Below, piece after piece: positions 3,303 through 53,571 of a DNA stretch of 64,000 nt. Numbering within the stretch: position 1 is the first letter of the stretch; every line of letters begins with the position of its first letter. The notes under the pieces were generated by a model. That model was given only the letters and a program-made list of their open reading frames with translations, was not told the DNA's origin and ran no database searches. The position numbers were made by a program, and so were the translations under genes. Source of the stretch: Octopus sinensis (Eukaryota); NCBI RefSeq assembly GCF_006345805.1, contig NC_042997.1, positions 182,032,001 through 182,096,000 of the forward strand, given 5' to 3'.

Positions 3303-4734
3303 CTATGTGTAAGGGTTAACAATAAAAAATCACTGTCTAATGTCTTGAAAGAATGGAAAGGCCTTCTGGGTAATATAATCCTAATAGTCCATGGTGTATG
3401 GCTCTATGGCTAGGACATTGGGCTCACAATCATGAGGTAATGAGTTCAATTCCCAGACCAGGCTGTGTTTTGTTCTTGAGTAAGACACTTTATTTCACAT
3501 TGCTCCAGTTCACTCAACTGTAGAAATGAGTTGTGATGTCACTGGTGCCAAGCTGTATTGGCCTTTGCCTTTCCCTTGGATAACATTGGTGGCATGGAGA
3601 GGGGAGGCTGGTATGCATGGGTGACTGCTAGTCTTCCATAAACAATCTTGCCCAGACTCATACCTCAGAGGGTAACTTTCTAGGTGCAAACCCATGGTCA
3701 GTCATGACTGAAGCAGGGTTTTACCCCTTAGTCCATAGCATATTCTGTTTAAAAAAACAGGGAGGTCATCTCTGGAAAGCTTTTAACCACAGGTCTGTCT
3801 GTTCAAGCAGCGATGAGTTCTGGGACTAAACAACAATAGAAACAACAACAGTGAACAGTTAATCAGGACTCACACCATTAGCCACAAAGAATAATCTCTA
3901 ATTCGAGCCTACTCTAAGCTACTAAGATCCACCCACCACACGCGATGGACTGGCGGTTGCACAGGTGTGAAAGCTACGTTGTTATCCTCATTCCGTAAAC
4001 GGTGGCTTTTAACAGGTGGAGAGCTGAATCATCCTGGGGTACAGAGGATTTGCAATCTAGACTAGGGTCTGAAAGTTTACCACACCATAGTGGGTTAAAC
4101 CATGGTTCCTCTGCTTTGTGGCAGAAGTAGGAAGAAAGAGTGAGAGAAAGTTGTGGTGAAAGAGTACAGCAGGGTTCACCACAACTCCCCGCCAGAACCT
4201 CGTGGAGCGTAGGTGTTTTTGCTCAATAAACATTCACAATGCCTGGTCTGGGAATGGAAACCGCGTTCTTACAACCATGAGTCCGCTGCCCTAACCACTG
4301 GGCTATTGCGTCTCCACACTGTTGTTATTGTTAGTGGTGGTGGTGGTGATAATGATGAGGATGATTACAACCACAATGATGATGATGGTTGTAGTTGTAG
4401 TGGTGGTGGTGGTGGTGGTGATAATAATTATGATGATGATGATGATGATGATGATGACAGTGAGGATGAAAAGATGTAAACCAGCCGATCATTCTAGAAT
4501 ATTTAACCTTCTGCTAGATGCTACTAAATAAATCTTAAGTGGATTCTAGTCTTAATTAACCAGAAGTAGAAATAACTGAAATTAAATTACTACTACTTCA
4601 GACTTCAAAAAGAGGTAAAGTTTTAAAAATAATTATTTTATTTTACTAACATATTTTTTTCTTTCATTCCATTTGCACTTTATTCACTGGTTCAGTGACT
4701 TAAGCAACATTTGTGCACTATATTATGTTCCCCC

Positions 4735-17895: not shown

Positions 17896-18306
17896 TTATT
17901 TGATGTAAGCCAACAGAAAATAAGCAATGAGCGAACCACCAAATAGGAACAAATAACAAACAAAAAACAAACAATTGAGCACCATTGCTAACCGTTTCCA
18001 CTCATCTAATACTTTTTTCTCTGATTCTGCTTCATTGAGTTTCTTTGTATAGTCACTGGCAATTCTTCTGATATTAGCAATATCAGCTTCTATTTGTTGG
18101 TAATCTGATCTCGGATGACTTTCTGGTAAGTCATCTTCACAGAGGTGTTCTTTGTCAACTTCTCCTTGGTTCTGTATTTTTGGTAGTGAACAATAATTAT
18201 TGATGCTGAGCTGGAAGCTGTTCTCTTCTGCAATCAAATATTGTGATCTGCTCTTTTTCACCATGTCCTTCAAACAAAGTATTGGTGCAAAGAAATCAAA
18301 CATAAT
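17896..18306 (-). CDS. Receptor terminal exon: MX helix, M3-M4 loop, MA helix and M4 (IMFDFFAPILCL...DEWKRLAMVLNCLFF...AYIK*)
   Basis: Acceptor tttctatttcacag|ATT; open frame to TAA at 17896-17898; EWKxxAxVL motif followed by a hydrophobic M4. Confidence 0.92.
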   Translation of the reverse strand: MMFDFFAPILCLKDMVKKSRSQYLIAEENSFQLSINNYCSLPKIQNQGEVDKEHLCEDDLPESHPRSDYQQIEADIANIRRIASDYTKKLNEAESEKKVLDEWKRLAMVLNCLFFVCYLFLFGGSLIAYFLLAYIK

Positions 18307-30725: not shown

Positions 30726-32163
30726 AAGGGCACTAATAAACGAATAAGCCCACTAAAATGTCGTATTTCACTGTGAATGAGTACTACAACCTTTGAAAAC
30801 GATCTACAGCCACGCATAAAAACAAAACAAAACAAAAAAGAACGAAAATAAAACAATAATACAAAATCAAAAAATAAAAATAAAGGTTATCTTGAATGGA
30901 AAATGGCGACAACTTACAGCGCGGAGTGGCTTTGCAATTTTACTTCTCGCATGTGAGTTTGCTAAGTTAACGACCAAGACATTTAGAAATGTTGACAGAG
31001 TTAGAATAGCCAAATTGAAACACAAGTAAATACCTGTAAACAGTAAAAGAAGTAAAAAAAAAAAAGGAAAATTTAATGGAAAATACGGAGCGATTTTAAA
31101 TAAACAAACGAAGAATAATGGTCGAAATATACATTTGCTGCGTGGAAGGTGTTTATAAGCCATTTAAGAAACACACAGAAACCATTAGATTCACTTCAAC
31201 ATTTAAATTTAATTTGTCAAAATATTTTCGTTGCTTTGAGATCGCGACCTGTTCACTGACAAAACTTCGACCTGTTCATTGACAAAACAGCACGAAGTTT
31301 TGTCAGTCGCGGTCTCAAAGCGACGAAAATATTTTGACAAATTAAATTTAGATGTTGAAGTGAATCTAACTGTTTTTGTGTGTTTCTTAAATGGCTTATA
31401 AACACCTTCCACGCTGCTATTGTTTTCGTTCCAGCACACGATCTTAGATCAGGTCACTTGCTATGCAAGTACATCTTCGTAAAATAAATATACATTGTCT
31501 TAGTTAAACGATTTTAATTTGTAAATAAATAAACAAGTAAATACTAAAATAAAATATGATAAAAATACAATACGCGTACGTACGTACGTACATACATACA
31601 TACATACATACATACATACATACATACATACATACATACATACATGCATACATACCGTATTTTAACGTGTATAAGGAACTCTTTATTGTCAAAAATTAGG
31701 TTTAAAAAATATGGGAGTTTCTTATACATGAATCCCTTACAAAATCCCTTACAAAACCTTTTTAACAAATTTTAAGCCTTCCAAATTAGGGGATTCCTTA
31801 TTGCAAAATATAAGAAGGGGTTGGTAATACATTAATGAATAGAACAAGTTTTATTTTTGACGTAGAAGGTAAACATAGATGAAAAGTATGTTTTCATATA
31901 TATATATAAAAAAAGTGCGGAGAATGAAATTTTAGCGAAAATCTTTCGTATCAAAGAATTTTTTCGTATAAAATATTTTTACGCAATAGATTTTAGAGCA
32001 TGTTTTAACCAAGAAATATTGCTGGAAGAAAAAAAAATCATAATTTTCTAACAGGTTTCACTGTCATCAGTTTTTTTTACGTGTTTAAAGTATGTTTTTC
32101 AACATTCCCCCCGCTACCATATATGTATATGCATATATGGTGTGTATTTTTATATGTAGATGT

Positions 32164-38703: not shown

Positions 38704-41700
38704 GTGTGTGTGTGTATATGTTTGCTTAAAATTTTACTTGCATTTGTTTGAAAACTTATTCCCAGTAAACCTGGGAATAACAGCGAGATCGTTCCACATT
38801 CCTCGAAACTCTGAAATTCCTGACCCACTGCCGGATGAATTTATGTATATACACCGCATATGTTTTATCCATCCATCCATCCATACATACATACATACAT
38901 ACATACAAACAAAAATACCCTGTTGTCGATGTTGAAATTCCAATGAAGGAGCTTTGGATCAAGGCTAGAAACCGGTTATTTCTCTATTGGCAAGAAATCT
39001 TGAAATAAACTGAATAACGGCATACATGGCTCAGTGGTTAGAGCGTCGAGCTTACGATCGCGAGGTTGTGAGTTCGATTCCCGGACCGGGCTGCGTGTTG
39101 TGTTCTTGAGCAAGACACTTTATTTCACGTTGCTCCGGTTCACTCGGCTGTAGAAATGAGTTGCGGCATCACTGGTGCCAAGCTATATCGACCTTTGCCT
39201 TACCCTTGGTAAACATCAGTGTTGTAGAGAGGGGAATTTGGTATGCATGGGCGACTGCAGGCCTTCCATAAACAGCCTTGCCCGGACTTGTACCTCGGAG
39301 GGTAACTTTTTAGGTGCAATCCCATGGTCATTCGTGACCGAGGGGGGTCTCCTAATGACATAATACATACATACATGTATCTGGTTTGCAAGATTTTTTA
39401 TTCACACACACACACTCACACACACACACACACACACATACACACACACACACATATATATATACACGAGGAGCTTCTTTCACTTTCCGTCTACCAAATC
39501 CACTCACAAGGCTTTGGTCGGCCTGGTTAATTTTTAAGGCATAGTTTATCAAGGACCGTATTATCCTGTTTCCACTAATGTATCTTTATAAACATGTGAC
39601 TGTAGAGTGTGATATGAGAAAGTTTTGCTTGCGAAATCCAGCCAGTGAACATGTATAAGCTTTTTCATTATTACAATGTTGTAAGGCAGCAAGCCGATAA
39701 AATCGTTACTGCGCCGGGCAAAATGCTTAGTGGTATTTCGTCTGCCGTTACGTTCTGAATTCAAATTCCGCCGGGGTCGACTTTGCCTTTCATCCTTTCG
39801 GGGTCGATTAAATAAGTACCAGTTACGCACTGGGGTCGATATAATCGGCTTAATCCATTTGTCTGTCCCTGTTTGTCCCTTCTGTGTTTAGCCCCTTGTG
39901 GGTAGTAAAGAAATAGGTATTTCGTCTGTCTTTGTATTCTGAGCTCAAAATCCGCCGAGATCGACTTTGCCTTTCATCTTTTCGTGGTTAATAAAATAAG
40001 CACTAGTTGAGCACTGGGGTCGATATAATCGACTTGCCCCTTCCCCTGAAATTGATGGCCTTGTGCCAAAGTTTGAAACCATTCTTACAGTTTTGCGTTT
40101 TACTAATTAACCTCAGACGAACCCTAATAAAAGACACCCTATCTGTGTTCAGTCACTTTGTTGCTATGTAGAATTAAATTATTCAATATACCAATTTTCT
40201 TTTAAGGTTCATCGGTATGAACTGAGGGAGACTTGACAGCAATTTTTAGATTTCTTGACTACGTAGAGATTCCTAGGAGTCACTATACAATGGTAAAAGT
40301 CAGCCCATCTGTGATCGATAACTGTGGGTATGTAGAACTATTCAATATACACATTTTAAAGACTCAAAAGTATGAATTGAGGGAGATTTGACAGCAATTT
40401 CTAGAAGATTTCTTGACCACGTACAGGTTCCTCGGAGTCACAATACGAACTGTCAACTTCTTGGTTTGATATTTAATTAAATTAACCAAAAGCCATCGTC
40501 CATACTGACACTACAGCACATGGATATACCTGACTTTTTTTCCCCCTTTTTACTACACTTATTCCTGCCAACATGGATCACCATAAGTCTCTTTACATTC
40601 AAATGATTATATTTAATGATGTTCTGAATTAATGGCCAATGCAGATCAACACTTCAATTCTTACACTCTTCTTGATACATACGTACGTATGCATGCAAGC
40701 ATGCATGCATTCACATATACATACATACATACATACATACATACATACATACATACATACATACATACATACATACATACATACATACATACATACATAC
40801 ATACATACATGCATGCATACATACAAAGGCATACATGCATTTATATATACCCATACATGCACACACACACGTATATGTATTTACACATACATACATACAT
40901 GCATGCATGCATGCATACAAAGGCATACATGCATTTATATATATACCCATACATACACAAACACGTATATGTATTTATGCACATGGATGCATTTATAGTA
41001 CATACATACATACATACATACATACATACATACACACATATGTACATACATACATAATACATACATACATACATACATACATACATACATACATACATAC
41101 GTCCATACATATGTAGGTACATACGTACATACGCACACATACAAACGCACTGATACACACGCACACGGAGGTTACGCTAATAGAGCAGTTACACTGAATT
41201 GGTTGGGAAGGACGCCAATCTGAAAACGTTTTCAAAAGACATTCTTCAAAGGAGTAACTTACCAAAATAAGGAAGCTCTTGTGAAGGTGGCAGAACTGAT
41301 ACGAGATACAATAAAAGAACGAAGAACGCCATGAATAATCCGAAGCCTAGATAAAAGACAAATGAATATAATAATACGTCATCATCGCCATTACCAATGT
41401 CATCATCATCATCATCATCATCATCATGCTCCTCCTCCCCCTCCTCGTCGTCGTCGTTGTCTTCGTTGTCATCGTTGCCATCTAATGGTCTTTATTGACA
41501 CATATTTACATTCTGAGTTCAAATCATACTTAGTGATATTATTACTTTCCCTTGGTCGATAAAATAAGTACCGGATCTTTTCACTTTGACCGGCAGATTT
41601 AGAAAATAATCTTTTTGTAATTAAACACTTTTAAACTTCGTATACTGGTAGAATGTGTCACATAAAACATCTTATTCTCTTGGCGTCCTTGAGAAAATTC

Positions 41701-42148
41701 TGTATTTTGTAAGCTATTTATTGTTAAATTTCTCGTATTTCGGCAATTTCAACCAAGCAATGACGTCTATTGAGGTGAATACAATTACTGCCAAGAGAAA
41801 AGGATGTTTTATGTGACACATTCTACCAGTATACGAAGTTTAAATTGTTTAGTTACAAAAAATTATTTTTCAAATCTGCCGGTCAAAGTGAAAAGATCCT
41901 AAGTACCAGTCAAATATTGAAGTACAATAGAATTAATTACATCCTTATTACAAAATTTGTGGTCTGATGTCAAAATCAAAAGTACTTTTTAGCAAAACCA
42001 TAGCCCTCATTCTCAAGCGTGTACGACTTGGCAGCGTGTATCAAGCTTTTGCTAATTGCTTTAGGTGCCTATACATTACCGAAAATATTTAGGCATCCTT
42101 TCGGCCTTCCTACCTTTAACCAATGGAAGATTAAGGGCATGACAGCCG

Positions 42149-42192
<44 letters not shown>

Positions 42193-45100
42193 AGGAGGGT
42201 ACTTCAGCAGTAATTGGCTGGTATTCATTTTTAGCTAAGCTGGAACAACGTGAAATAAGGCGGCGAGCTGGCAGAAGCGTTAGCGCGCCGGGCGAAATGC
42301 CTTAGCGGTATTTCGTCTGCCGTTACGTTGTGAGTTCAAATTCCGCCGAGGTCGACTTTGCCTTTCATCCTTTCGGGGTCGATTAAATAAGTACCAGTTA
42401 CGCACTGGGGTCGATGTAATCCAAAGCATTTTATCTGGTTTCTTAATGACTTTGCCAATTCGTTACACAAATGATATTCATTAATAAACCAATTTGTTTT
42501 GTTTTTTTCCTGATAAAGCTATAGGATTGTTGTTTTCTTGTAATGGTGAGATGATCAAGTGTCTACGTTTTCGTTGTTCTTGTGTAGCCCCAGATGAGCC
42601 TCGATCGAGTAATCTTACAACGCACAGGTAATTAATCAAACGACGAAGCTCCACCCACAAACTTTCTCAATGATACAATGCTTCTGCTTAATCGAGAATT
42701 ACATTGCACTTACATTCTCGTGGATCATGGCTTCAAATCCCTTGCTGGTGTTTCATAGAATTTCTTGACAGAACATTTTATTAAACATTAACAAGTTTAC
42801 CAAGCTGTTGGTGAGAATATGTTATCTGATCATTTTGGAAATGCTCCGTCCTGGAACAGAATCCAGTCTCCAAACCTGTCATTGTAGACAGACCATCGTG
42901 TAGCCTGTTTGTGATATCTTACGTGCAACAATTTATTCCAGGTTCAGTCCACCAATAGATACACTTCCTTCTCTTAGTTGCAATAATCAACACGTTTTCC
43001 TCACAATGTCTGTTATCAATACAATATTGCCAAATGCCGGTTAATTAGAATGTATTGATAACAGACAGGCAGTAACTAACTGGTGTTAACGTATTGATAG
43101 CCAATCAACAGCCACGTATCAGGGAGTTGGTAATAGCACGTTAATGAAAGGCAATGATATACACATGAAGATACCAAACAGGCATACAGTCAAGTACCTT
43201 GCTTTTGGCAATAACAAATCAGATAGAGGTAACAGTTATCTGAGCATAACGTGCAAAAAACGAACCATGTTACAGGATGTTCATAATGGCATGTTTCTTT
43301 CTACTACAGGCACAAGGCCTGAAATATTGAGTGATGGGTCTAGTCGGTTACATTGACCCAAGTGCTCATCTGCTGCTTATTTTATCGACCCCGCGAGTAT
43401 GAAAGGCAAAGGAAACTACGGTGGAATTTGAACTTGGAATGTAAAAGGCAGAAAACAAAATCCGTTAAACATTTTGACCGACACGCTAACGATTCCGCTA
43501 GCTCGTTGCCTATAATAATGACCTATTGGGTTCAAATTTTGGCGCAAGGCCAGCGTTTTCGTGAGGAGTGGATAAGTTGATTACATCGGCCCCAGTTTTG
43601 AAGTGGCACTTATTTTATCGACCTCGAAAGGATGAAAAGCAAAGTTGATTTCGGCGAAATTTGAACTCAAAACTAGATGAAATGCCCCTAAGTATTTTGC
43701 TCAGCATGCTAGCGGTTCTGCTAGCTCGACGCCTTTAATAATGACTTACTGGCAACAAAATTAACATTCACGTATCAAACAGAAGCAATATAAAAGATGG
43801 CATCAGGAAATGTGCCATGATTTACTGACCTAAAGTGACTTTGTCGGCAAAATCTGATGGTAACAAGAAAAGGACAAGGCTGAGAGAAGACAGCAGAAAA
43901 CACGGCAGCACGAACGTGTAGAAAGGAACAGTCGCATGACGTGAGAAGTGAAAGTTTATCTTCAGGTTAACATAGGGTACGTCACACCCTGAACACTTAT
44001 TGAGGATCTTCTCGGTAGTTATGCGTTCCACCTTCCACAGCGGATGTTTGTCAATGTTCCACGAAGGGATGGGTCGGTTGACAAAATTCATGTCCATGTG
44101 GCGAATGTTGTAAATCTCTGAACCTAGGATCAAGGAGCAGATCTGTATGTCGAACGGGAAGAAAGTGGTGTTCGGAAAGCATTGCACTTCGTATTTGGTC
44201 TGCGAAAAGAGAATAAAAATATAGTAAAATAAATACGAAAATATAATAATAAATATTGGGTTGTCCGGAAAGTTCGTGCCGATTTTCAAAGTAAAGAAAA
44301 GGCCAATAAATACTTGCCATTACATTTTTAATCAACCAAATATGAATCATTTTGTTGCACAATGCGTCTCCATCTTTCCTTTAACTTGAAAATACCCTCT
44401 TCCCAGAACTGAGGTAGTTTCATGACAAAGAATTCATCAAGGTATCTTTTTACGTCATCCAAAGAATTGAAATTTCTACTATTAAGACTATTCTGCAGAG
44501 ACCTGAATAAGTGGAAATCCGAAGGAGCAATATCTGGTGAATATGGAGGGTGGGGTAACACATCCCAGCCGAGCTGCAGCAATTTTTGTCTGGTTCCCAA
44601 AACATCAAGTGCCGAAAATGAACTTTCTTATCTTCCTTTTTAAAGGGTTACAAAATTAACACATATTATAGGAACATAAACTTTCTTCCACGAAAAGATA
44701 GCTTAAACTGTGCTGTAAATGGAGATGTAGACAAATCCTATTTCATGGACTCAACCATGTTCTAAAATAAGTCAAAAAGGTAAGCTACTATAAATCGGCA
44801 CGAACTTTCCGGACAACCCAACATAAATAAGAGATAATGAAGAAACAGTTATAATCTATGATAAGTATGGTGTTTGGTGGTTAGCGATGTAGTGGTTAAA
44901 TTATGGTTGATGGTTAGCGATACGATGGCAGTAGAATTTATTGGCAGCCCCATTGGAACTCCTAATAAAGTAGAATTATGGTCAAAGGCGTTCTACTCAC
45001 GCCCATCTCGTTTTATGCATGTCCTGGATTAGGTTATCCAATGAACCTGTCTTGTATTTTAAAAACGGTGGAATGTGATTTGAGAGAAGTTTGGCTGCTA

Positions 45101-50600: not shown

Positions 50601-51000
50601 ACTACACAAATATATAAATAGGTGTGGGCGTCTTTATACATGATTCTATGTATATAAGTACATATAAGTGTGTGTATATATATAGTTACTGTCCAATGAA
50701 TTAATAAATCATATGGTATACACCTGGTAGTGTAGTGATCATTAAAAATTCTCATATCTTCCGTCTTCCGTCTCTCTCATTAATTACATACATACATGTA
50801 TATATATGTATGTATGTATCTATGTATGTGTGTGTGTATACATACATACTTGATGAAAGTGGGAGGAACAAGGTGTAAAAGAATCTAAAGAACAACTGGT
50901 TTCGTATAAAAAAAAACTTACCACAGGTATCCACAATACCACCCCATCATGTGATACGATGATACGGACAAATGACCGCTTGAATCCAGGTTCCCTTGCT
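17896..51000 (-). CDS. Divergent nicotinic-acetylcholine-receptor-like Cys-loop ligand-gated ion channel subunit, 5'-partial; join(complement 51000-50922, 44199-43830, 41346-41263, 31033-30918, 18306-17896)
   Basis: Five exons with GT-AG sites and matching phases (start 2, then 0, 1, 1, 0) splice into one open frame. It contains the Cys-loop CFPNTTFFPFDIQIC (C-x13-C with FPFD), loop C, M1-M3, the intracellular loop, M4 and a stop codon. Confidence 0.92.
19040..19555. mobile_element. Same MITE family, copy 3 (inverted relative to copy 2)
   Basis: The interior is the reverse complement of copy 2. Confidence 0.78.
19800..20280 (-). mobile_element. Decayed RTE-clade RT fragment
   Basis: The minus strand reads IFQVRQLEEKYSAKSKSLSLAFVDLKKAF. 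Confidence 0.7.
21141..21323. mobile_element. Short pogo/Tigger-type MITE (a truncated relative lies at about 31634-31800)
   Basis: TIRs TACCATATTTTAATGTGCATAAGG / CCTTATACACATTAAAATATGGTA. Confidence 0.65.
24331..24500 (-). mobile_element. Fragment of an R2/R4-type LINE restriction-like endonuclease domain, within a SINE
   Basis: LIDMTVPIDINV...ELSKYKGLEIEIGKIW...IPVVIGAL. Confidence 0.6.
26471..26885 (+). mobile_element. tRNA-derived SINE family A, doubled form (other copies at about 2343, 14440-14820 minus, 39685, 42258, 45155 and 55290-55690 minus)
   Basis: Head GGCGGCGAGCTGGCAGAATCGTTAG, B-box GGGTTCAAATTCC and body GTCGACTTTGCCTTTCATCC; many dispersed copies. Confidence 0.8.
27645..28515. 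repeat. Compound (ACC/ATC/GCC/ACG)n tract with higher-order units, intronic
   Basis: The block ATCGCCACCACCATCATGACTACCACCACCACCACTACCACC recurs. Confidence 0.9.
29019..29370 (+). mobile_element. tRNA-derived SINE family B (copies at about 22405, 26930, 52450 and 57735 plus; 12595, 23310, 51755 and 63395 minus)
   Basis: GGAGTGGTTGTGTGGTAAGTAGCTTGC...GGTTCAGTCCC...GACTGAAACAAGTAAA; most copies carry an internal microsatellite. Confidence 0.8.
30918..31033 (-). CDS. Receptor exon: M3 (IYLCFNLAILTLSTFLNVLVVNLANSHARSKIAKPLRA)
   Basis: Acceptor cttttactgtttacag|GT and donor GCT|gtaagt; 116 nt, phase 1 to 0. Ends with an M3 V.V.NL motif. Confidence 0.9.
31140..31413. repeat. About 275-bp near-perfect palindrome (fold-back MITE)
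   Basis: GCGTGGAAGGTGTTTATAAGCCATTTAAG... / ...CTTAAATGGCTTATAAACACCTTCCACGC; TGCT on both flanks. Confidence 0.85.
32345..32387 (-). ncRNA. Minimal hammerhead ribozyme in the inverted terminal copy of the Penelope-like element
   Basis: CCAC-CTGAAGA-TTGTC(gatcaa)GACAA-GAAA-C(gatt)G-TA-GTGG: core intact, 5-bp stem II, GUA triplet and a CCAC/GTGG stem I. Confidence 0.7.
37677..37718 (+). ncRNA. Hammerhead motif at the 3' end of the Penelope-like element; GAAA reduced to GAA, probably inactive or a sequencing error
   Basis: ccacCTGAAGAttgtcgatcaagacaaGAAcgattgtagtgg. Confidence 0.55.
37945..38173. repeat. About 230-bp near-perfect palindrome
   Basis: The arms AGATTGAACAGAAATCGTTTTATTTCATTCTACACGTGTTTCGAAAGGCACAAATTACC and its exact reverse complement surround a short loop. 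Confidence 0.88.
38482..38602. repeat. About 120-bp near-perfect palindrome
   Basis: ATAAGGATGCCAAGTGCTGG...GAGAGTGAAA / TTTCACTCTC...CCAGCACTTGGCATCCTTAT. Confidence 0.85.
39025..39350 (+). mobile_element. tRNA-headed SINE family C with a conserved central domain (copies at about 3395, 11405, 21575 and 60880)
   Basis: GGCTCAGTGGTTAGAGCG...GAGTTCGATTCC followed by GTGTTCTTGAGCAAGACACTTTATTTCACGTTGCTCC. Confidence 0.75.
41263..41346 (-). CDS. Receptor exon: M2 and M2-M3 loop (FGLFMAFFVLLLYLVSVLPPSQELPYFG)
   Basis: Acceptor tttgtcttttatctag|GC and donor TTTG|gtaagt; 84 nt, phase 1 to 1. Not in the ORF track; found by reading the minus strand. Confidence 0.9.
41573..41899. mobile_element. 327-bp MITE with about 110-bp TIRs starting GG and an 8-bp TSD (TAAGTACC)
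   Basis: GGATCTTTTCACTTTGACCGGCAG... / ...CTGCCGGTCAAAGTGAAAAGATCC; TSDs at 41565-41572 and 41900-41907; inserted into a SINE. Confidence 0.85.
43830..44199 (-). CDS. Receptor exon: Cys-loop, loops B/C and M1 (TKYEVQCFPNTTFFPFDIQIC...LPSDFADKVTLG)
   Basis: Acceptor ttctcttttcgcag|ACC and donor TTAG|gtcagt; 370 nt. Cys-loop signature, PCFLLSSL M1 motif and a pre-M2 xKVTLG motif. Confidence 0.95.
44256..44821 (-). mobile_element. Mariner transposon, internally deleted
   Basis: TIRs TTGGGTTGTCCGGAAAGTTCGTGCCGATTT and its reverse complement, left TA, and HPPYSPDIAPSDFHLF. Confidence 0.92.
46654..46693 (-). ncRNA. Minimal type I hammerhead ribozyme (inverted copy, sense to the receptor pre-mRNA)
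   Basis: Reverse complement of the motif at 47007-47046. Confidence 0.82.
47007..47046 (+). ncRNA. Minimal type I hammerhead ribozyme
   Basis: ATGCG-CTGACGA-GAGG(caata)CCTC-GAAA-C(cg)G-TC-CGTGT: intact core, 4-bp stem II, palindromic ACCGGT stem III, GUC cleavage triplet at 47039-47041 and a 5-bp stem I with two G-U pairs. Confidence 0.85.
47366..47405 (+). ncRNA. Minimal type I hammerhead ribozyme (second direct copy)
   Basis: Same motif; CTGACGA starts at 47371 and the cleavage C is at 47400, 359 nt after the first. Confidence 0.85.
50922..51000 (-). CDS. Receptor exon (extracellular beta5-beta6): AREPGFKRSFVRIIVSHDGVVLWIPV
   Basis: Acceptor tttcttgatttttag|A and donor GTG|gtaagt; 79 nt, phase 2 to 0. 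It resembles the nAChR V.V.xDG.V.W.P motif and joins in frame to TKYEVQC. Confidence 0.85.
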
Positions 51001-52039: not shown

Positions 52040-53571
52040 TACGACGGGCTTCTTTCAGTTTCCGTCTACCAAATCTACTCACAAGGCTTTGGTTGGCCCG
52101 AGACACTTGCCCAAGGTGCCACGCAGTGGGACTAAACCCGGAACCATGTGGTTTGTAAGCAAGTTACCACACAGCCACTCCTACGCCTACGTAAATATTT
52201 TTTAAAAAAAGAATGTTTTTATGCGTAATAGTGAAGGTAACAGTCAGGAAAAAATCATTATTCTGGTAATCGTATCGTGGTCATGGGTTTCTTCGATCCA
52301 AGAAGTTGTCAGTTTTTCTTCGACGTTTTGCGTTTCGTCTTTTTTTCGCCCCCAGCGTAGGCTTTCAGATGACTGTAGATGATTATCAATTCACCGCAGA
52401 GTAAGTTCAAATATTTTGCCTACAAATTTCTTTGTAATAGTAATCTACAGGAGTGGCTGTGTGGTAAGTAGCTTGCTAACCAACCACATGGTTACGGGTT
52501 CAGTCCCACTGCGTGGCATCTTGGGCAAGTGTCTTCTGCTATAGCCCCGGGCCGACCAATGCCTTGTAAGTGGATTTGGTAGACGGAAACTGAAAGAAGC
52601 CTGTCGTATATATGTATATATATATGTAAGTGTGTGTGTGTGTGTGTGTTTGTCCCCCTAGCATTGCTTGACAACCGATGCTGGTGTGCTTATGTCCCCG
52701 TTACTTAGCGGTTCGGCAAAAGAGACCGATAGAATAAGTACTGGGCTTACAAAGAATAAGTCCCGGGGTCGATTTGCTCGACTAAAGGCGGTGCTCCAGC
52801 ATGGCCGCAGTCAAATGGCTGAAACAAGTAAAAGAGTAAAAGAGTAAAGAGTACACCGTTTGAAAGGTATTTGTATAAAATTTCATAAAAAAAACTACCT
52901 ATTTTCCAGAAAGTTATGAGTGGGAAAATGACGGGTCCTGTGAATTTTCCGAAACTCTTCTCCCCAACCCTCAGAAATTTTTTCCAACAAATCTTTACAG
53001 ACTCTCGATCTACAAAATTTAAGCGATTATTTGGTGAAATTTTCGTTAAAAAGTATCCGTTTTTCTGGAATTTATGAGGCAACATAATCGATTGAGTGTT
53101 AAAATATAGTTTTGCCTTTTTCAATAAAAGTTAACATTAACGGATTAACGTTAACTTCCCTTGCATTTTCAAAGAATTAACGGATTAACGAAGTTAACTT
53201 TTTGGTTAACGGATTAATGATTAACGAAGTTAACTTTTTGATTAACGGTGCCCACCTCTGTATATATGTATATATAGATCTATAGCTATCTATCTATCTA
53301 TTTACTTACTTCCAAATAAATGTGTCAACATGTGACATTATTGACCGAAGTTACCGTGGTCTTTGCCGTAGGCTTTTCTTTCCATGGATAAACCTTATCT
53401 GCTTCCCCTTTACACTTTACTTCATGACATTTCTGTGATATACAATCCTTATTGATCGTTTTTTTGATCGAAAACCTACCCCACTTTTTTTTCTCCCCCA
53501 AAAAGAAAAGTTCTACTTTGTAATTTGTTCCTCTGTGTTCAGCCCTGTGTGGCTAATAAAGAAATCTATCG

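What the first reader, a model, noticed from the sequence alone, without database searches (positions are those of the whole stretch)
43830..44199. Cys-loop subunit with a remodelled, probably non-cholinergic ligand site
Seen: the Cys-loop is intact, but loop B reads GSEIY and loop C reads ILNKCSGCDVPY. Established: nAChR alpha subunits use the loop B Trp (GSWTY) and loop C Y-x-CC-x-x-x-Y with vicinal cysteines. Here the Trp is replaced by Glu, the first loop C Tyr is missing and the cysteines are spaced CxxC. Cephalopods have expanded divergent AChR-like subunits, including the sucker chemotactile receptors. Inference: an orphan receptor for a ligand other than acetylcholine, related to that expansion.
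Basis: partly seen in the sequence, partly recalled or inferred. Interest (0 to 1): 0.75.

Follow-up and report, generated by a model that had tools for sequence, protein, structure and literature searches.

The report
Divergent octopus nicotinic-like channel subunit
This is one exon of a real, expressed, single-copy octopus gene for a nicotinic-receptor-like channel subunit that has lost most residues needed to bind acetylcholine. It is not one of the octopus "taste-by-touch" receptors, and what gates it is unknown.

Summary
Window 44199..43830 (minus strand) is a 370-nt exon with canonical splice sites. It encodes an intact Cys-loop, loop B GSEIY, loop C with CxxC, and M1.

It is exon 5 of a gene of at least 8 exons. 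Automatic annotation calls it "nAChR alpha-5/alpha-10-like" in Octopus sinensis, O. vulgaris, O. bimaculoides and Argonauta hians. No searched paper mentions it. RNA contigs from two studies join this exon exactly to the M2 exon. Four variant sites in a further contig are all synonymous.

Loop D Trp is Leu and loop A Tyr is Phe, so three of five aromatic-box residues are gone, on both subunit faces.

The proposed link to the chemotactile receptors is not supported. Those are intronless genes clustered on another chromosome and form a separate clade (100/100). Forcing the two together costs 20 lnL (p-AU 0.035). This gene is instead the fast-evolving sister (94/91) of the spiralian Pro-Ala, anion-type nAChR-like subunits. 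It carries Asp at -1' and Met at 9' in a highly conserved pore.

The function is not settled. I favour a pore-lining accessory subunit that binds no agonist (about 0.42) over a receptor for another ligand (about 0.35). It is a new member of a known kind, of moderate interest.

The parts
50922..51000 (-). Exon 4 (79 nt): beta strands of the ligand-binding domain and loop E (residues 84-109 of the O. vulgaris protein P0152). It starts in phase 2 and ends in phase 0.
   Evidence: tblastn of P0152 is 100% identical here. Acceptor tttttag| and donor GTG|gtaagt were read. The phases fit exon 3 on scaffold C979 and exon 5.
43830..44199 (-). Exon 5 (370 nt), the finding itself: Cys-loop, loop B (GSEIY), loop F, loop C (CxxC), M1 and the M1-M2 linker (SDFADK).
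   Evidence: RNA contigs end at or continue across both exon borders. Both intron positions and phases are shared with the Pro-Ala-type paralogue at C1:178.7 Mb.
41263..41346 (-). Exon 6 (84 nt): the pore helix M2, with 6' Gly, 9' Met, 13' Val and 20' Ser.
   Evidence: tblastn is 100% identical. Splice sites tctag| and G|gtaagt were read. RNA contigs X1 record 1 and X5 record 16 join it directly to exon 5 with no mismatch.
30918..31033 (-). Exon 7 (116 nt): M3 and the start of the intracellular loop. It includes FLNVLVVNLA, which is identical in the Haliotis Pro-Ala-type protein P0007.
   Evidence: acceptor tttacag|, donor GCT|gtaagt. Alignments.
17896..18306 (-). Exon 8 (408 nt plus the TAA stop): intracellular loop, MA helix, M4 and the C-terminus.
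   Evidence: tblastn is 100% identical to P0152 residues 300-435. The acceptor tttcacag| and the stop codon were read.

Best explanation
The feature is exon 5 of a real, transcribed, single-copy octopod gene for a pentameric ligand-gated ion channel subunit of the nicotinic (nAChR) family. The gene belongs to a small, fast-evolving lineage: Octopus, Argonauta and two unnamed transcriptome proteins. That lineage is sister to the spiralian Pro-Ala (anion-type, ACC-like) nAChR subunits, not to the chemotactile receptors.

The lineage first lost the loop B Trp. Octopods then also lost the loop D Trp and the first loop C Tyr, and turned the vicinal Cys pair into CxxC. No interface formed by this subunit can therefore hold acetylcholine in the usual aromatic cage.

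The transmembrane pore is strongly conserved. It has an acidic -1' residue (Asp) and no -2' Pro, which by the known rule predicts a cation-type filter. It also has Met instead of the usual 9' Leu.

I think it most likely works as a pore-lining subunit that binds no agonist itself. It would co-assemble with agonist-binding paralogues and tune their gating or conductance, as muscle beta1 or neuronal alpha5/beta3 subunits do in vertebrates.

Shown: gene structure, expression, phylogenetic position and residue changes. Inferred: loss of ACh binding, ion selectivity and the accessory role.
For: - **Exon and gene model:**. The 5' exons lie on unplaced scaffold C979.
- **Expression:** RNA contigs from two studies join exon 5 to exon 6 exactly.
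- **Purifying selection:** 4 of 4 differences in contig X10 are synonymous. The ORF is intact in four species.
- **Single copy:** the next-best locus in the genome is 29% identical.
- **Phylogeny:** the target clade has 100/99 support and is sister to the Pro-Ala clade at 94/91. The CR clade is separate at 100/100. AU test p = 0.035.
- **Shared derived features with the Pro-Ala clade:** identical FLNVLVVNLA in M3, the M2 pattern LG..F.AFF.LL, and no 9' Leu. Intron positions are shared with the C1:178.7 Mb paralogue.
- **Site residues:** TrpB is E/A/T against W in 36 of 37 others. TyrC1 is C, Cys192 is G, TrpD is L and TyrA is F.
- **For the accessory reading:** the loss is stepwise. The unnamed relatives P0006 and P0203 keep YxCC and TrpD but lack TrpB. 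The TrpB position is not fixed: E in Octopus, A in Argonauta. Binding loops are no better conserved than the rest of the domain (71% against 75%), while M1-M3 is 91% conserved.
- **Fold:** a canonical subunit, pLDDT 85.9. The best structural matches are nAChRs.
- **Selectivity rule:** Glu against Pro-Ala, from PMC4055736.
Against: - No functional data exist, and no partner subunit has been identified.
- Its nearest relatives carry the anion-type Pro-Ala motif while it carries Asp at -1'. Co-assembly with them would mix selectivity filters.
- Loop C keeps its full length, a conserved Cys pair (CSGC, CAGC, CVGC) and TyrC2. Vertebrate structural subunits usually lose these, which hints that the pocket is still used.
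- Orphan nAChR-like subunits have repeatedly turned out to bind new ligands (CRs, ACR-23).
- Support for the sister relationship (94/91) is just below the strict threshold, and the target branch is long.
- The tissue of expression is unknown, because run identities were coded and only contigs were laid.
Confidence: 0.42

Rival explanations
1. It is an orphan ligand-gated channel. The remodelled pocket (Glu or Ala at TrpB, a CxxC-stapled loop C, retained TyrC2 and PheA) binds a ligand other than acetylcholine, and the subunit gates a cation-type pore as a homomer or as the principal subunit.
For: - The loop C length, its Cys pair and TyrC2 are conserved across octopods.
- The whole ligand-binding domain is under purifying selection.
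- The stem branch to octopods is long, 1.15 substitutions per site, and is followed by slow change, as expected after a shift of function.
- There are precedents: CRs in this same genome, and divergent molluscan clades with pocket substitutions noted in PMC13174522.
Against: - Pocket loops B, C and F are the least conserved parts of the domain (57-69% between Octopus and Argonauta). The TrpB-position residue differs between genera.
- The gene is single-copy, unlike expanded chemosensory families.
- The stepwise decay pattern resembles that of unused sites.
- No candidate ligand is known.
Confidence: 0.35
2. It is a member or offshoot of the cephalopod chemotactile receptor (CR) expansion, a contact chemoreceptor of the suckers.
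For: It shares the loss of the ACh aromatic cage with CRs. The AU test rejects a joint clade only marginally (p 0.035).
Against: - It has at least 8 exons, whereas CRs are intronless.
- It lies on C1, whereas the CR cluster is at C16:13.3-13.85 Mb.
- It is 20-25% identical to CR ORFs, against 29-36% to other nAChR-like genes.
- The CR clade has 100/100 support and excludes it.
- In the PDB sequence search, CRT1 and CRB1 are absent from its best 60 hits, below even 5-HT3A. A C16 ORF hits CRT1 at 2e-118.
- CRs have no loop C cysteines and keep GEK and the 9' Leu.
Confidence: 0.04
3. It still contributes to acetylcholine or choline sensing, for example through a non-canonical site or through residual aromatic residues (PheA, TyrC2) with the acidic loop B residue standing in for the cation-pi Trp.
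For: Glu at the TrpB position could pair with a quaternary or primary amine. TyrC2 and an aromatic loop A residue remain. Its sister clade is made of ACh-gated channels.
Against: Argonauta and the two distant relatives have Ala or Thr, not Glu, at that position. Three of five cage residues are gone on both faces.
Confidence: 0.1
4. It is a decaying or non-functional gene copy, or an annotation or assembly artefact.
For: The O. sinensis assembly splits the gene, and the NCBI model is truncated. RNA contig depth is low, at 3-8.
Against: - Every exon has an intact frame and canonical splice sites.
- Intact orthologues exist in three Octopus species and in Argonauta.
- RNA contigs from two studies are correctly spliced.
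- All variants seen are synonymous.
- M1-M3 is 91% conserved over the Octopus-Argonauta split.
- The predicted fold is confident.
Confidence: 0.03

Closest known systems
Pro-Ala (anion-selective) nAChR-like subunits of Spiralia: Lymnaea nicotinic chloride channels and Schistosoma SmACC-1/2 (PMC4055736). Represented here by Haliotis P0007, Macrostomum P0105, Echinococcus P0138 and at least four O. sinensis paralogues.
   Same: It is their sister group in the tree (94/91). They share an identical M3 stretch and the same M2 pattern, and neither has the 9' Leu. Its intron positions match those of the C1:178.7 Mb paralogue. The two genes lie on the same chromosome, 3.3 Mb apart.
   Different: Those subunits keep GSWTY, YxCC and the loop D Trp, and carry Pro-Ala at -2'/-1'. 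This gene has lost the ACh cage and has Ala-Asp there. Its ligand-binding domain scores half as much against Pfam: 106 bits against 203.
Cephalopod chemotactile receptors (CRT1 and CRB1: PDB 8EIS, 9E6B, 8EIZ)
   Same: They belong to the same superfamily, occur in the same animal, and have also lost the acetylcholine aromatic cage.
   Different: CRs are intronless, tandemly expanded on C16, lack loop C cysteines and keep GEK and the 9' Leu. They form a separate clade with 100/100 support. This gene has many exons, is single-copy, and is only 20-25% identical to them.
Vertebrate structural or accessory nAChR subunits (muscle beta1; neuronal alpha5 and beta3)
   Same: They work the same way under my favoured reading: pore-lining subunits whose own faces do not form an agonist site. 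Torpedo gamma and delta carry Gln at the loop B Trp position (from my own knowledge, not checked here).
   Different: There is no orthology. The automatic names 'alpha-5-like' and 'beta-3-like' are best-hit labels only. Unlike beta subunits, this protein keeps a long loop C with a Cys pair.
Divergent molluscan nAChR clades with pocket substitutions (Cys-less, Inhibitory-CL and nAChR-D in the MolluscaGenes preprint, PMC13174522; lophotrochozoan expansion, PMC6896357)
   Same: It is the same kind of thing: molluscan nAChR-family subunits with substitutions at agonist-contact positions and atypical M2 motifs.
   Different: This lineage keeps a Cys pair and has an acidic -1' residue rather than a PAR-type motif.

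Membership tests
Cys-loop pentameric ligand-gated ion channel, nAChR branch (Pfam PF02931 + PF02932) | Cys-loop of two cysteines 13 residues apart containing FPFD | tested here: met
   CFPNTTFFPFDIQIC in the exon. Both cysteines are invariant in the 42-sequence alignment.
Cys-loop pentameric ligand-gated ion channel, nAChR branch (Pfam PF02931 + PF02932) | Extracellular beta-sandwich domain followed by four transmembrane helices | tested here: met
   Both Pfam domains score over their cut-offs in P0152. The AlphaFold model has pLDDT 85.9 with M1-M4 helices. Best Foldseek hits are nAChRs, at TM-scores of 0.67-0.83 depending on normalisation. Best PDB sequence hits are nAChR alpha subunits at 3e-37.
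Acetylcholine-binding (alpha-type) nAChR subunit | Loop B Trp (TrpB, GSWTY), the cation-pi partner of ACh | tested here: not met
   Glu in Octopus, Ala in Argonauta, Ala or Thr in P0006 and P0203. It is Trp in 36 of 37 other sequences.
Acetylcholine-binding (alpha-type) nAChR subunit | Loop C Y-x-C-C with vicinal cysteines, plus a second Tyr | tested here: not met
   The sequence is K-C-S-G-C-D-V-P-Y. TyrC1 is replaced by Cys, the first vicinal Cys by Gly, and only the second Cys and TyrC2 are kept.
Acetylcholine-binding (alpha-type) nAChR subunit | Complementary-face loop D Trp and loop A Tyr | tested here: not met
   Loop D Trp is Leu in octopods; P0006, P0203 and Haliotis keep Trp. Loop A Tyr is Phe. 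These residues lie in exons on scaffold C979.
Cephalopod chemotactile receptors (CR) | Intronless gene within the tandem CR cluster | tested here: not met
   The gene has at least 8 exons spread over more than 33 kb on C1. The CR-type ORFs are intronless at C16:13.3-13.85 Mb.
Cephalopod chemotactile receptors (CR) | Phylogenetic grouping with CRT1 and CRB1 | tested here: not met
   The CR clade has 100/100 support and excludes it. A forced joint clade is 20.2 lnL worse, p-AU 0.035. The C16 ORF L003 matches PDB CRT1 at 2e-118, but CRs are absent from the target's best 60 PDB hits.
Cephalopod chemotactile receptors (CR) | Expression in sucker sensory epithelium and gating by poorly soluble natural products | not testable with these tools
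   Run identities were coded and only contigs were laid.
Pro-Ala anion-selective nAChR-like channels (Lymnaea and Schistosoma ACC type) | Pro-Ala replacing the -1' Glu in the M1-M2 linker (PMC4055736) | tested here: not met
   The target has Ala(-2') Asp(-1') Lys(0'). P0006 has Pro-Glu-Lys and P0203 Leu-Glu-Lys. P0007, P0105, P0138 and the O. sinensis paralogues L031, L032 and L033 have Pro-Ala-Lys; L035 has Pro-Ser-Lys.
Pro-Ala anion-selective nAChR-like channels (Lymnaea and Schistosoma ACC type) | Phylogenetic membership of the clade | tested here: inconclusive
   It is sister to the clade, not inside it (94/91). It shares M2 and M3 signatures and intron positions. The long target branch calls for caution.

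The most novel reading that the evidence does not exclude
An old, single-copy lineage of non-cholinergic pentameric channels arose beside the Pro-Ala anion channels and kept or regained a cation-type filter with an unusual 9' Met gate. In octopods it rebuilt loop C around a CxxC pair. The channel would then be gated by an unidentified endogenous or environmental ligand, or by metal or redox state acting on the CxxC and acidic pocket. That would be a second route to new ligand specificity in octopus nAChR-like proteins, independent of the chemotactile receptors.
Probability: 0.3. Interest if true: 0.6.

Novelty: new member of a known kind. Interest (0 to 1): 0.35.

Why it matters
Octopus chemotactile receptors showed that nicotinic-type channels can be turned into sensors for other molecules. 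This gene shows a second, independent dismantling of the acetylcholine site in the same genome. It comes from a different parent lineage, the Pro-Ala anion-type subunits, and in a conserved single-copy gene rather than an expanded family.

If it binds a new ligand, it is a compact test case for how the pocket is re-specified. If it is an accessory subunit, it may be needed to reconstitute native octopus cholinergic channels in heterologous cells.

There are also practical points. The public O. sinensis gene model is truncated because the assembly splits the gene. All the Octopus models seen start at an internal Met.

Tried and rejected
- **Exon finding with in-genome paralogues.** tblastn and a 7-sequence HMM found only the focal exon convincingly. 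A BLOSUM sliding-window scan timed out. The exons were resolved only after the orthologous proteins were retrieved.
- **The 5' exons.** 110 kb upstream of the window held none of them. A whole-genome search then found them on unplaced scaffold C979.
- **Word-based protein searches**. These returned only close relatives. My 1e-20 threshold was too strict, and the tool is blind to relatives at 30-35% identity, so it says little about the true breadth of the family.
- **Literature.** No searched paper mentions the accessions.
- **Joined model.** Full-length analyses used database proteins that match the window exon by exon.
- **CR membership and pseudogene readings.** Both were considered and rejected; see the rival explanations.
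- **Complex prediction.** Not used. Any two Cys-loop ligand-binding domains would be expected to dock, so a pass would not have moved my odds.
- **Intron ORF at 44328-44600.** Pfam gave nothing at E <= 0.01.
Full report
**1. Observation**

The minus strand of window 43830-44199 translates without stops. It gives a Cys-loop (two cysteines 13 residues apart, around FPFD), GSEIY, KCSGCDVPY and the start of M1.

The stretch is an exact exon. A pyrimidine tract and cag precede base 44199, and G|gtcagt follows base 43830. Pfam Neur_chan_LBD matches at E 3.3e-9.

HMMER alignments to human alpha6 and alpha7 structures fix the residue correspondences:
- Glu sits on the loop B Trp.
- The first Cys sits on the first loop C Tyr.
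- Gly sits on the first vicinal Cys, and the second Cys on the second vicinal Cys.
- The last Tyr is retained.

**2. The gene**

The window is G000:C1:182032001-182096000 of a 2.72-Gb assembly with 13,516 contigs. The length of contig C1 equals that recorded for the O. sinensis protein XP_029645319.2, so the genome is Octopus sinensis.

A search of 1.84 billion representative proteins gave one hit at 96% identity. Nothing else exceeded 36%. That cluster holds automatic models from three species:
- O. bimaculoides: "alpha-5-like", 436 aa.
- O. sinensis: 362 aa.
- O. vulgaris: "alpha-10-like", 435 aa.

An Argonauta hians orthologue (471 aa, 77% identical, with a signal peptide) came from the word search.

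Using these database proteins, I mapped five coding exons on the minus strand of the window:

| Exon | Window coordinates | Content |
|---|---|---|
| 4 | 51000-50922 | ligand-binding domain strands, loop E |
| 5 | 44199-43830 | the finding |
| 6 | 41346-41263 | M2 |
| 7 | 31033-30918 | M3 |
| 8 | 18306-17896 | intracellular loop, M4, stop |

All have canonical splice sites and matching phases. Each was compared by reference, and full-length work used the database proteins, which match the window exon by exon.

The exons for residues 1-83 are not within 110 kb upstream. They lie on the unplaced 18-kb scaffold C979. A 100-N gap sits 1.5 kb past the window end. This explains the truncated NCBI O. 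sinensis model and its doubtful first exon at window 53309-53338.

On C979 the frame stays open upstream of the annotated Met and matches the Argonauta N-terminal helix. The Octopus models therefore start too late, and a signal-peptide exon remains to be found.

**3. Expression and constraint**

The stretch 41000-44500 (3,501 letters) was laid against four runs from four studies:
- A 1,628-nt contig (X1) and a 723-nt contig (X5) cover exon 5 from border to border. Both continue directly into exon 6 with no mismatch.
- Contigs of the other two runs stop at the exon borders.
- The unique intron sequence is uncovered.

The gene is therefore transcribed and spliced as modelled. Tissue and expression level cannot be read from contigs.

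The X10 contig differs from the window at four sites in the exon, and all four are synonymous third positions.

Identity between Octopus and Argonauta, by region:

| Region | Identity |
|---|---|
| Ligand-binding domain | 73.5% |
| M1-M3 | 91% |
| Intracellular loop | 73% |
| Six binding loops | 71% |
| Rest of the ligand-binding domain | 75% |

AlphaFold gives a confident canonical subunit (pLDDT 85.9). Its best structural neighbours are muscle and alpha7 nAChRs.

**4. Relatives**

The genome has many Neur_chan_LBD loci. They include a block of intronless ORFs of about 400 aa at C16:13.3-13.85 Mb. One of these matches PDB "Chemotactile receptor CRT1" at 2e-118, so that block is the chemotactile receptor (CR) family.

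The target protein is only 20-25% identical to those ORFs, against 29-36% to other nAChR-like loci. It has no close paralogue. CRT1 and CRB1 are absent from its best 60 PDB sequence hits, ranking below even 5-HT3A.

A 72-row quick tree and a 50-row careful tree agree on four points:
- The CRs form a separate clade (100/100).
- The target group (Octopus x2, Argonauta and the unnamed P0006) is monophyletic (100/99).
- Its sister is a clade (95/92) of Haliotis P0007, flatworm proteins (Macrostomum, Echinococcus) and O. sinensis paralogues.
- The target group and that clade join with 94/91 support.

Forcing the target and the CRs into one clade costs 20.2 log-likelihood units (p-AU 0.035). This disfavours the CR link but does not crush it.

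Independent characters agree with the tree:
- Ten consecutive M3 residues are identical in Octopus and Haliotis.
- Both groups share the M2 pattern.
- The 9' Leu is absent from both groups.
- Both intron positions of the focal exon recur in the paralogue at C1:178.7 Mb.

Most sister-clade members carry PPESPAK in the M1-M2 linker; one O. sinensis paralogue reads PPESPSK. All shown also keep GSWTY or GPWTY and YxCC. The Pro-Ala motif is the published mark of the anion-selective nicotinic channels of Lymnaea and Schistosoma (PMC4055736).

**5. What changed**

In a 42-sequence alignment:

| Position | Target clade | Other sequences |
|---|---|---|
| TrpB | E, E, A, A, T | W in 36 of 37 |
| TyrC1 | C in octopods; Y in P0006 and P0203 | Y in 34 of 37 |
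| First vicinal Cys | G in octopods; C in P0006 and P0203 | C in 36 of 37 |
| TrpD | L in octopods; W in P0006 and P0203 | W in Haliotis and 24 of 28 filled positions; I/R in flatworms |
| TyrA | F throughout | mostly Y |
| TyrC2 | kept | Y or F |

The loss is stepwise. TrpB went first, in the common ancestor of the target clade. The complementary face and the loop C motif followed in octopods.

In the pore, the target has Ala-Asp-Lys at -2' to 0'. P0006 has Pro-Glu-Lys and P0203 has Leu-Glu-Lys. It also has 6' Gly, 9' Met, 13' Val and 20' Ser. By the Glu versus Pro-Ala rule this reads as cation-type, but that is inference.

**6. Mechanism**

The data show a pore-forming subunit under purifying selection that cannot cage acetylcholine on either face.

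Two readings remain:
- **Accessory subunit that binds no agonist (about 0.42).** I slightly favour this. The site decays stepwise, the TrpB-position residue is not fixed between genera, the pocket loops are no better conserved than their surroundings, and the gene is single-copy.
- **Receptor for another ligand (about 0.35).** Loop C keeps its length, a conserved Cys pair and TyrC2. The long stem branch followed by slow change looks like a functional shift. There are precedents for such shifts.

CR membership, residual ACh sensing and pseudogene status are less likely (see the rival explanations).

**7. Novelty**

The gene is already present in automatic annotation, but none of the searched papers mentions it. 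Divergent molluscan nAChR clades with pocket substitutions and odd M2 motifs are described in general terms (PMC13174522).

This is therefore a new, uncharacterised member of a known kind. The specific new points are its sister position to the Pro-Ala clade, its two-step loss of the site, and its unusual pore.

Earlier notes of this scan on the same genome describe the CR cluster and another intronless orphan. I confirmed the CR assignment of the C16 cluster independently.

**8. Limits**

- The word-based searches see only close kin.
- The tree lacks named Lymnaea and CR-like reference sequences.
- Tissue of expression could not be determined.

Noticed in passing
window 53309-53338 (minus); L027 (G000:C979) 4716..4549 and 3790..3680; C1:182097506-182097605: The O. 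sinensis assembly splits this gene. Exons for residues 1-83 sit on unplaced scaffold C979, and a 100-N gap lies 1.5 kb beyond the window end. The NCBI O. sinensis model is therefore 5'-truncated and starts with a doubtful 10-residue first exon. All the Octopus models seen start at an internal Met, and the signal-peptide exon was not located.
   Followed up: partly
window 44328-44600 (minus strand, intron 4): A 90-aa ORF resembles the C-terminal part of a mariner-type transposase (PPYSPD..APSD.HLF motif, recognised from my own knowledge). Pfam gave no match at E <= 0.01. It is probably a transposon remnant.
   Followed up: partly
window 42170-42520; also 43223-43339 and 43574-43690 (intron 5): Short elements have enormous summed RNA-contig depth, up to about 1e6 in every run, with many variant copies and joints. 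These are highly repeated, transcribed interspersed repeats, possibly SINE-like.
   Followed up: no
window 41647-41827: A palindromic element matches Rfam MIR7993 on both strands at about 50 bits, well under the gathering score of 100. It is most likely an inverted-repeat transposon rather than a miRNA gene.
   Followed up: no
G000:C1:178719969-178754969 (L031 covers 178735000-178736500): This is a Pro-Ala-type nAChR-like gene, 62-66% identical to Haliotis P0007 over the homologous exon. It has an intact ACh site and the same two intron positions as the focal exon. It lies 3.3 Mb from the target on the same chromosome and is a plausible parent or partner gene.
   Followed up: partly
alignment A4, M2 position 9': The 9' Leu is held by 31 of the 37 non-target sequences in alignment A4, but is absent from the three Pro-Ala proteins in it (Ile, Val, Gln) and from the target clade (Met, Gly). 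I know of no published comment on this.
   Followed up: partly
G000:C6303:133249-134744 (L035); C12601:20554-21363 (L037): These are Pro-Ala-type copies whose matches run through several in-frame stops in an otherwise continuous alignment. They may be processed pseudogenes or genes with short introns.
   Followed up: no
P0153 (O. vulgaris CAI9716433.1, 510 aa): This annotated isoform replaces M4 with an unrelated read-through tail after residue 404. It is likely an annotation artefact or a non-productive transcript.
   Followed up: no
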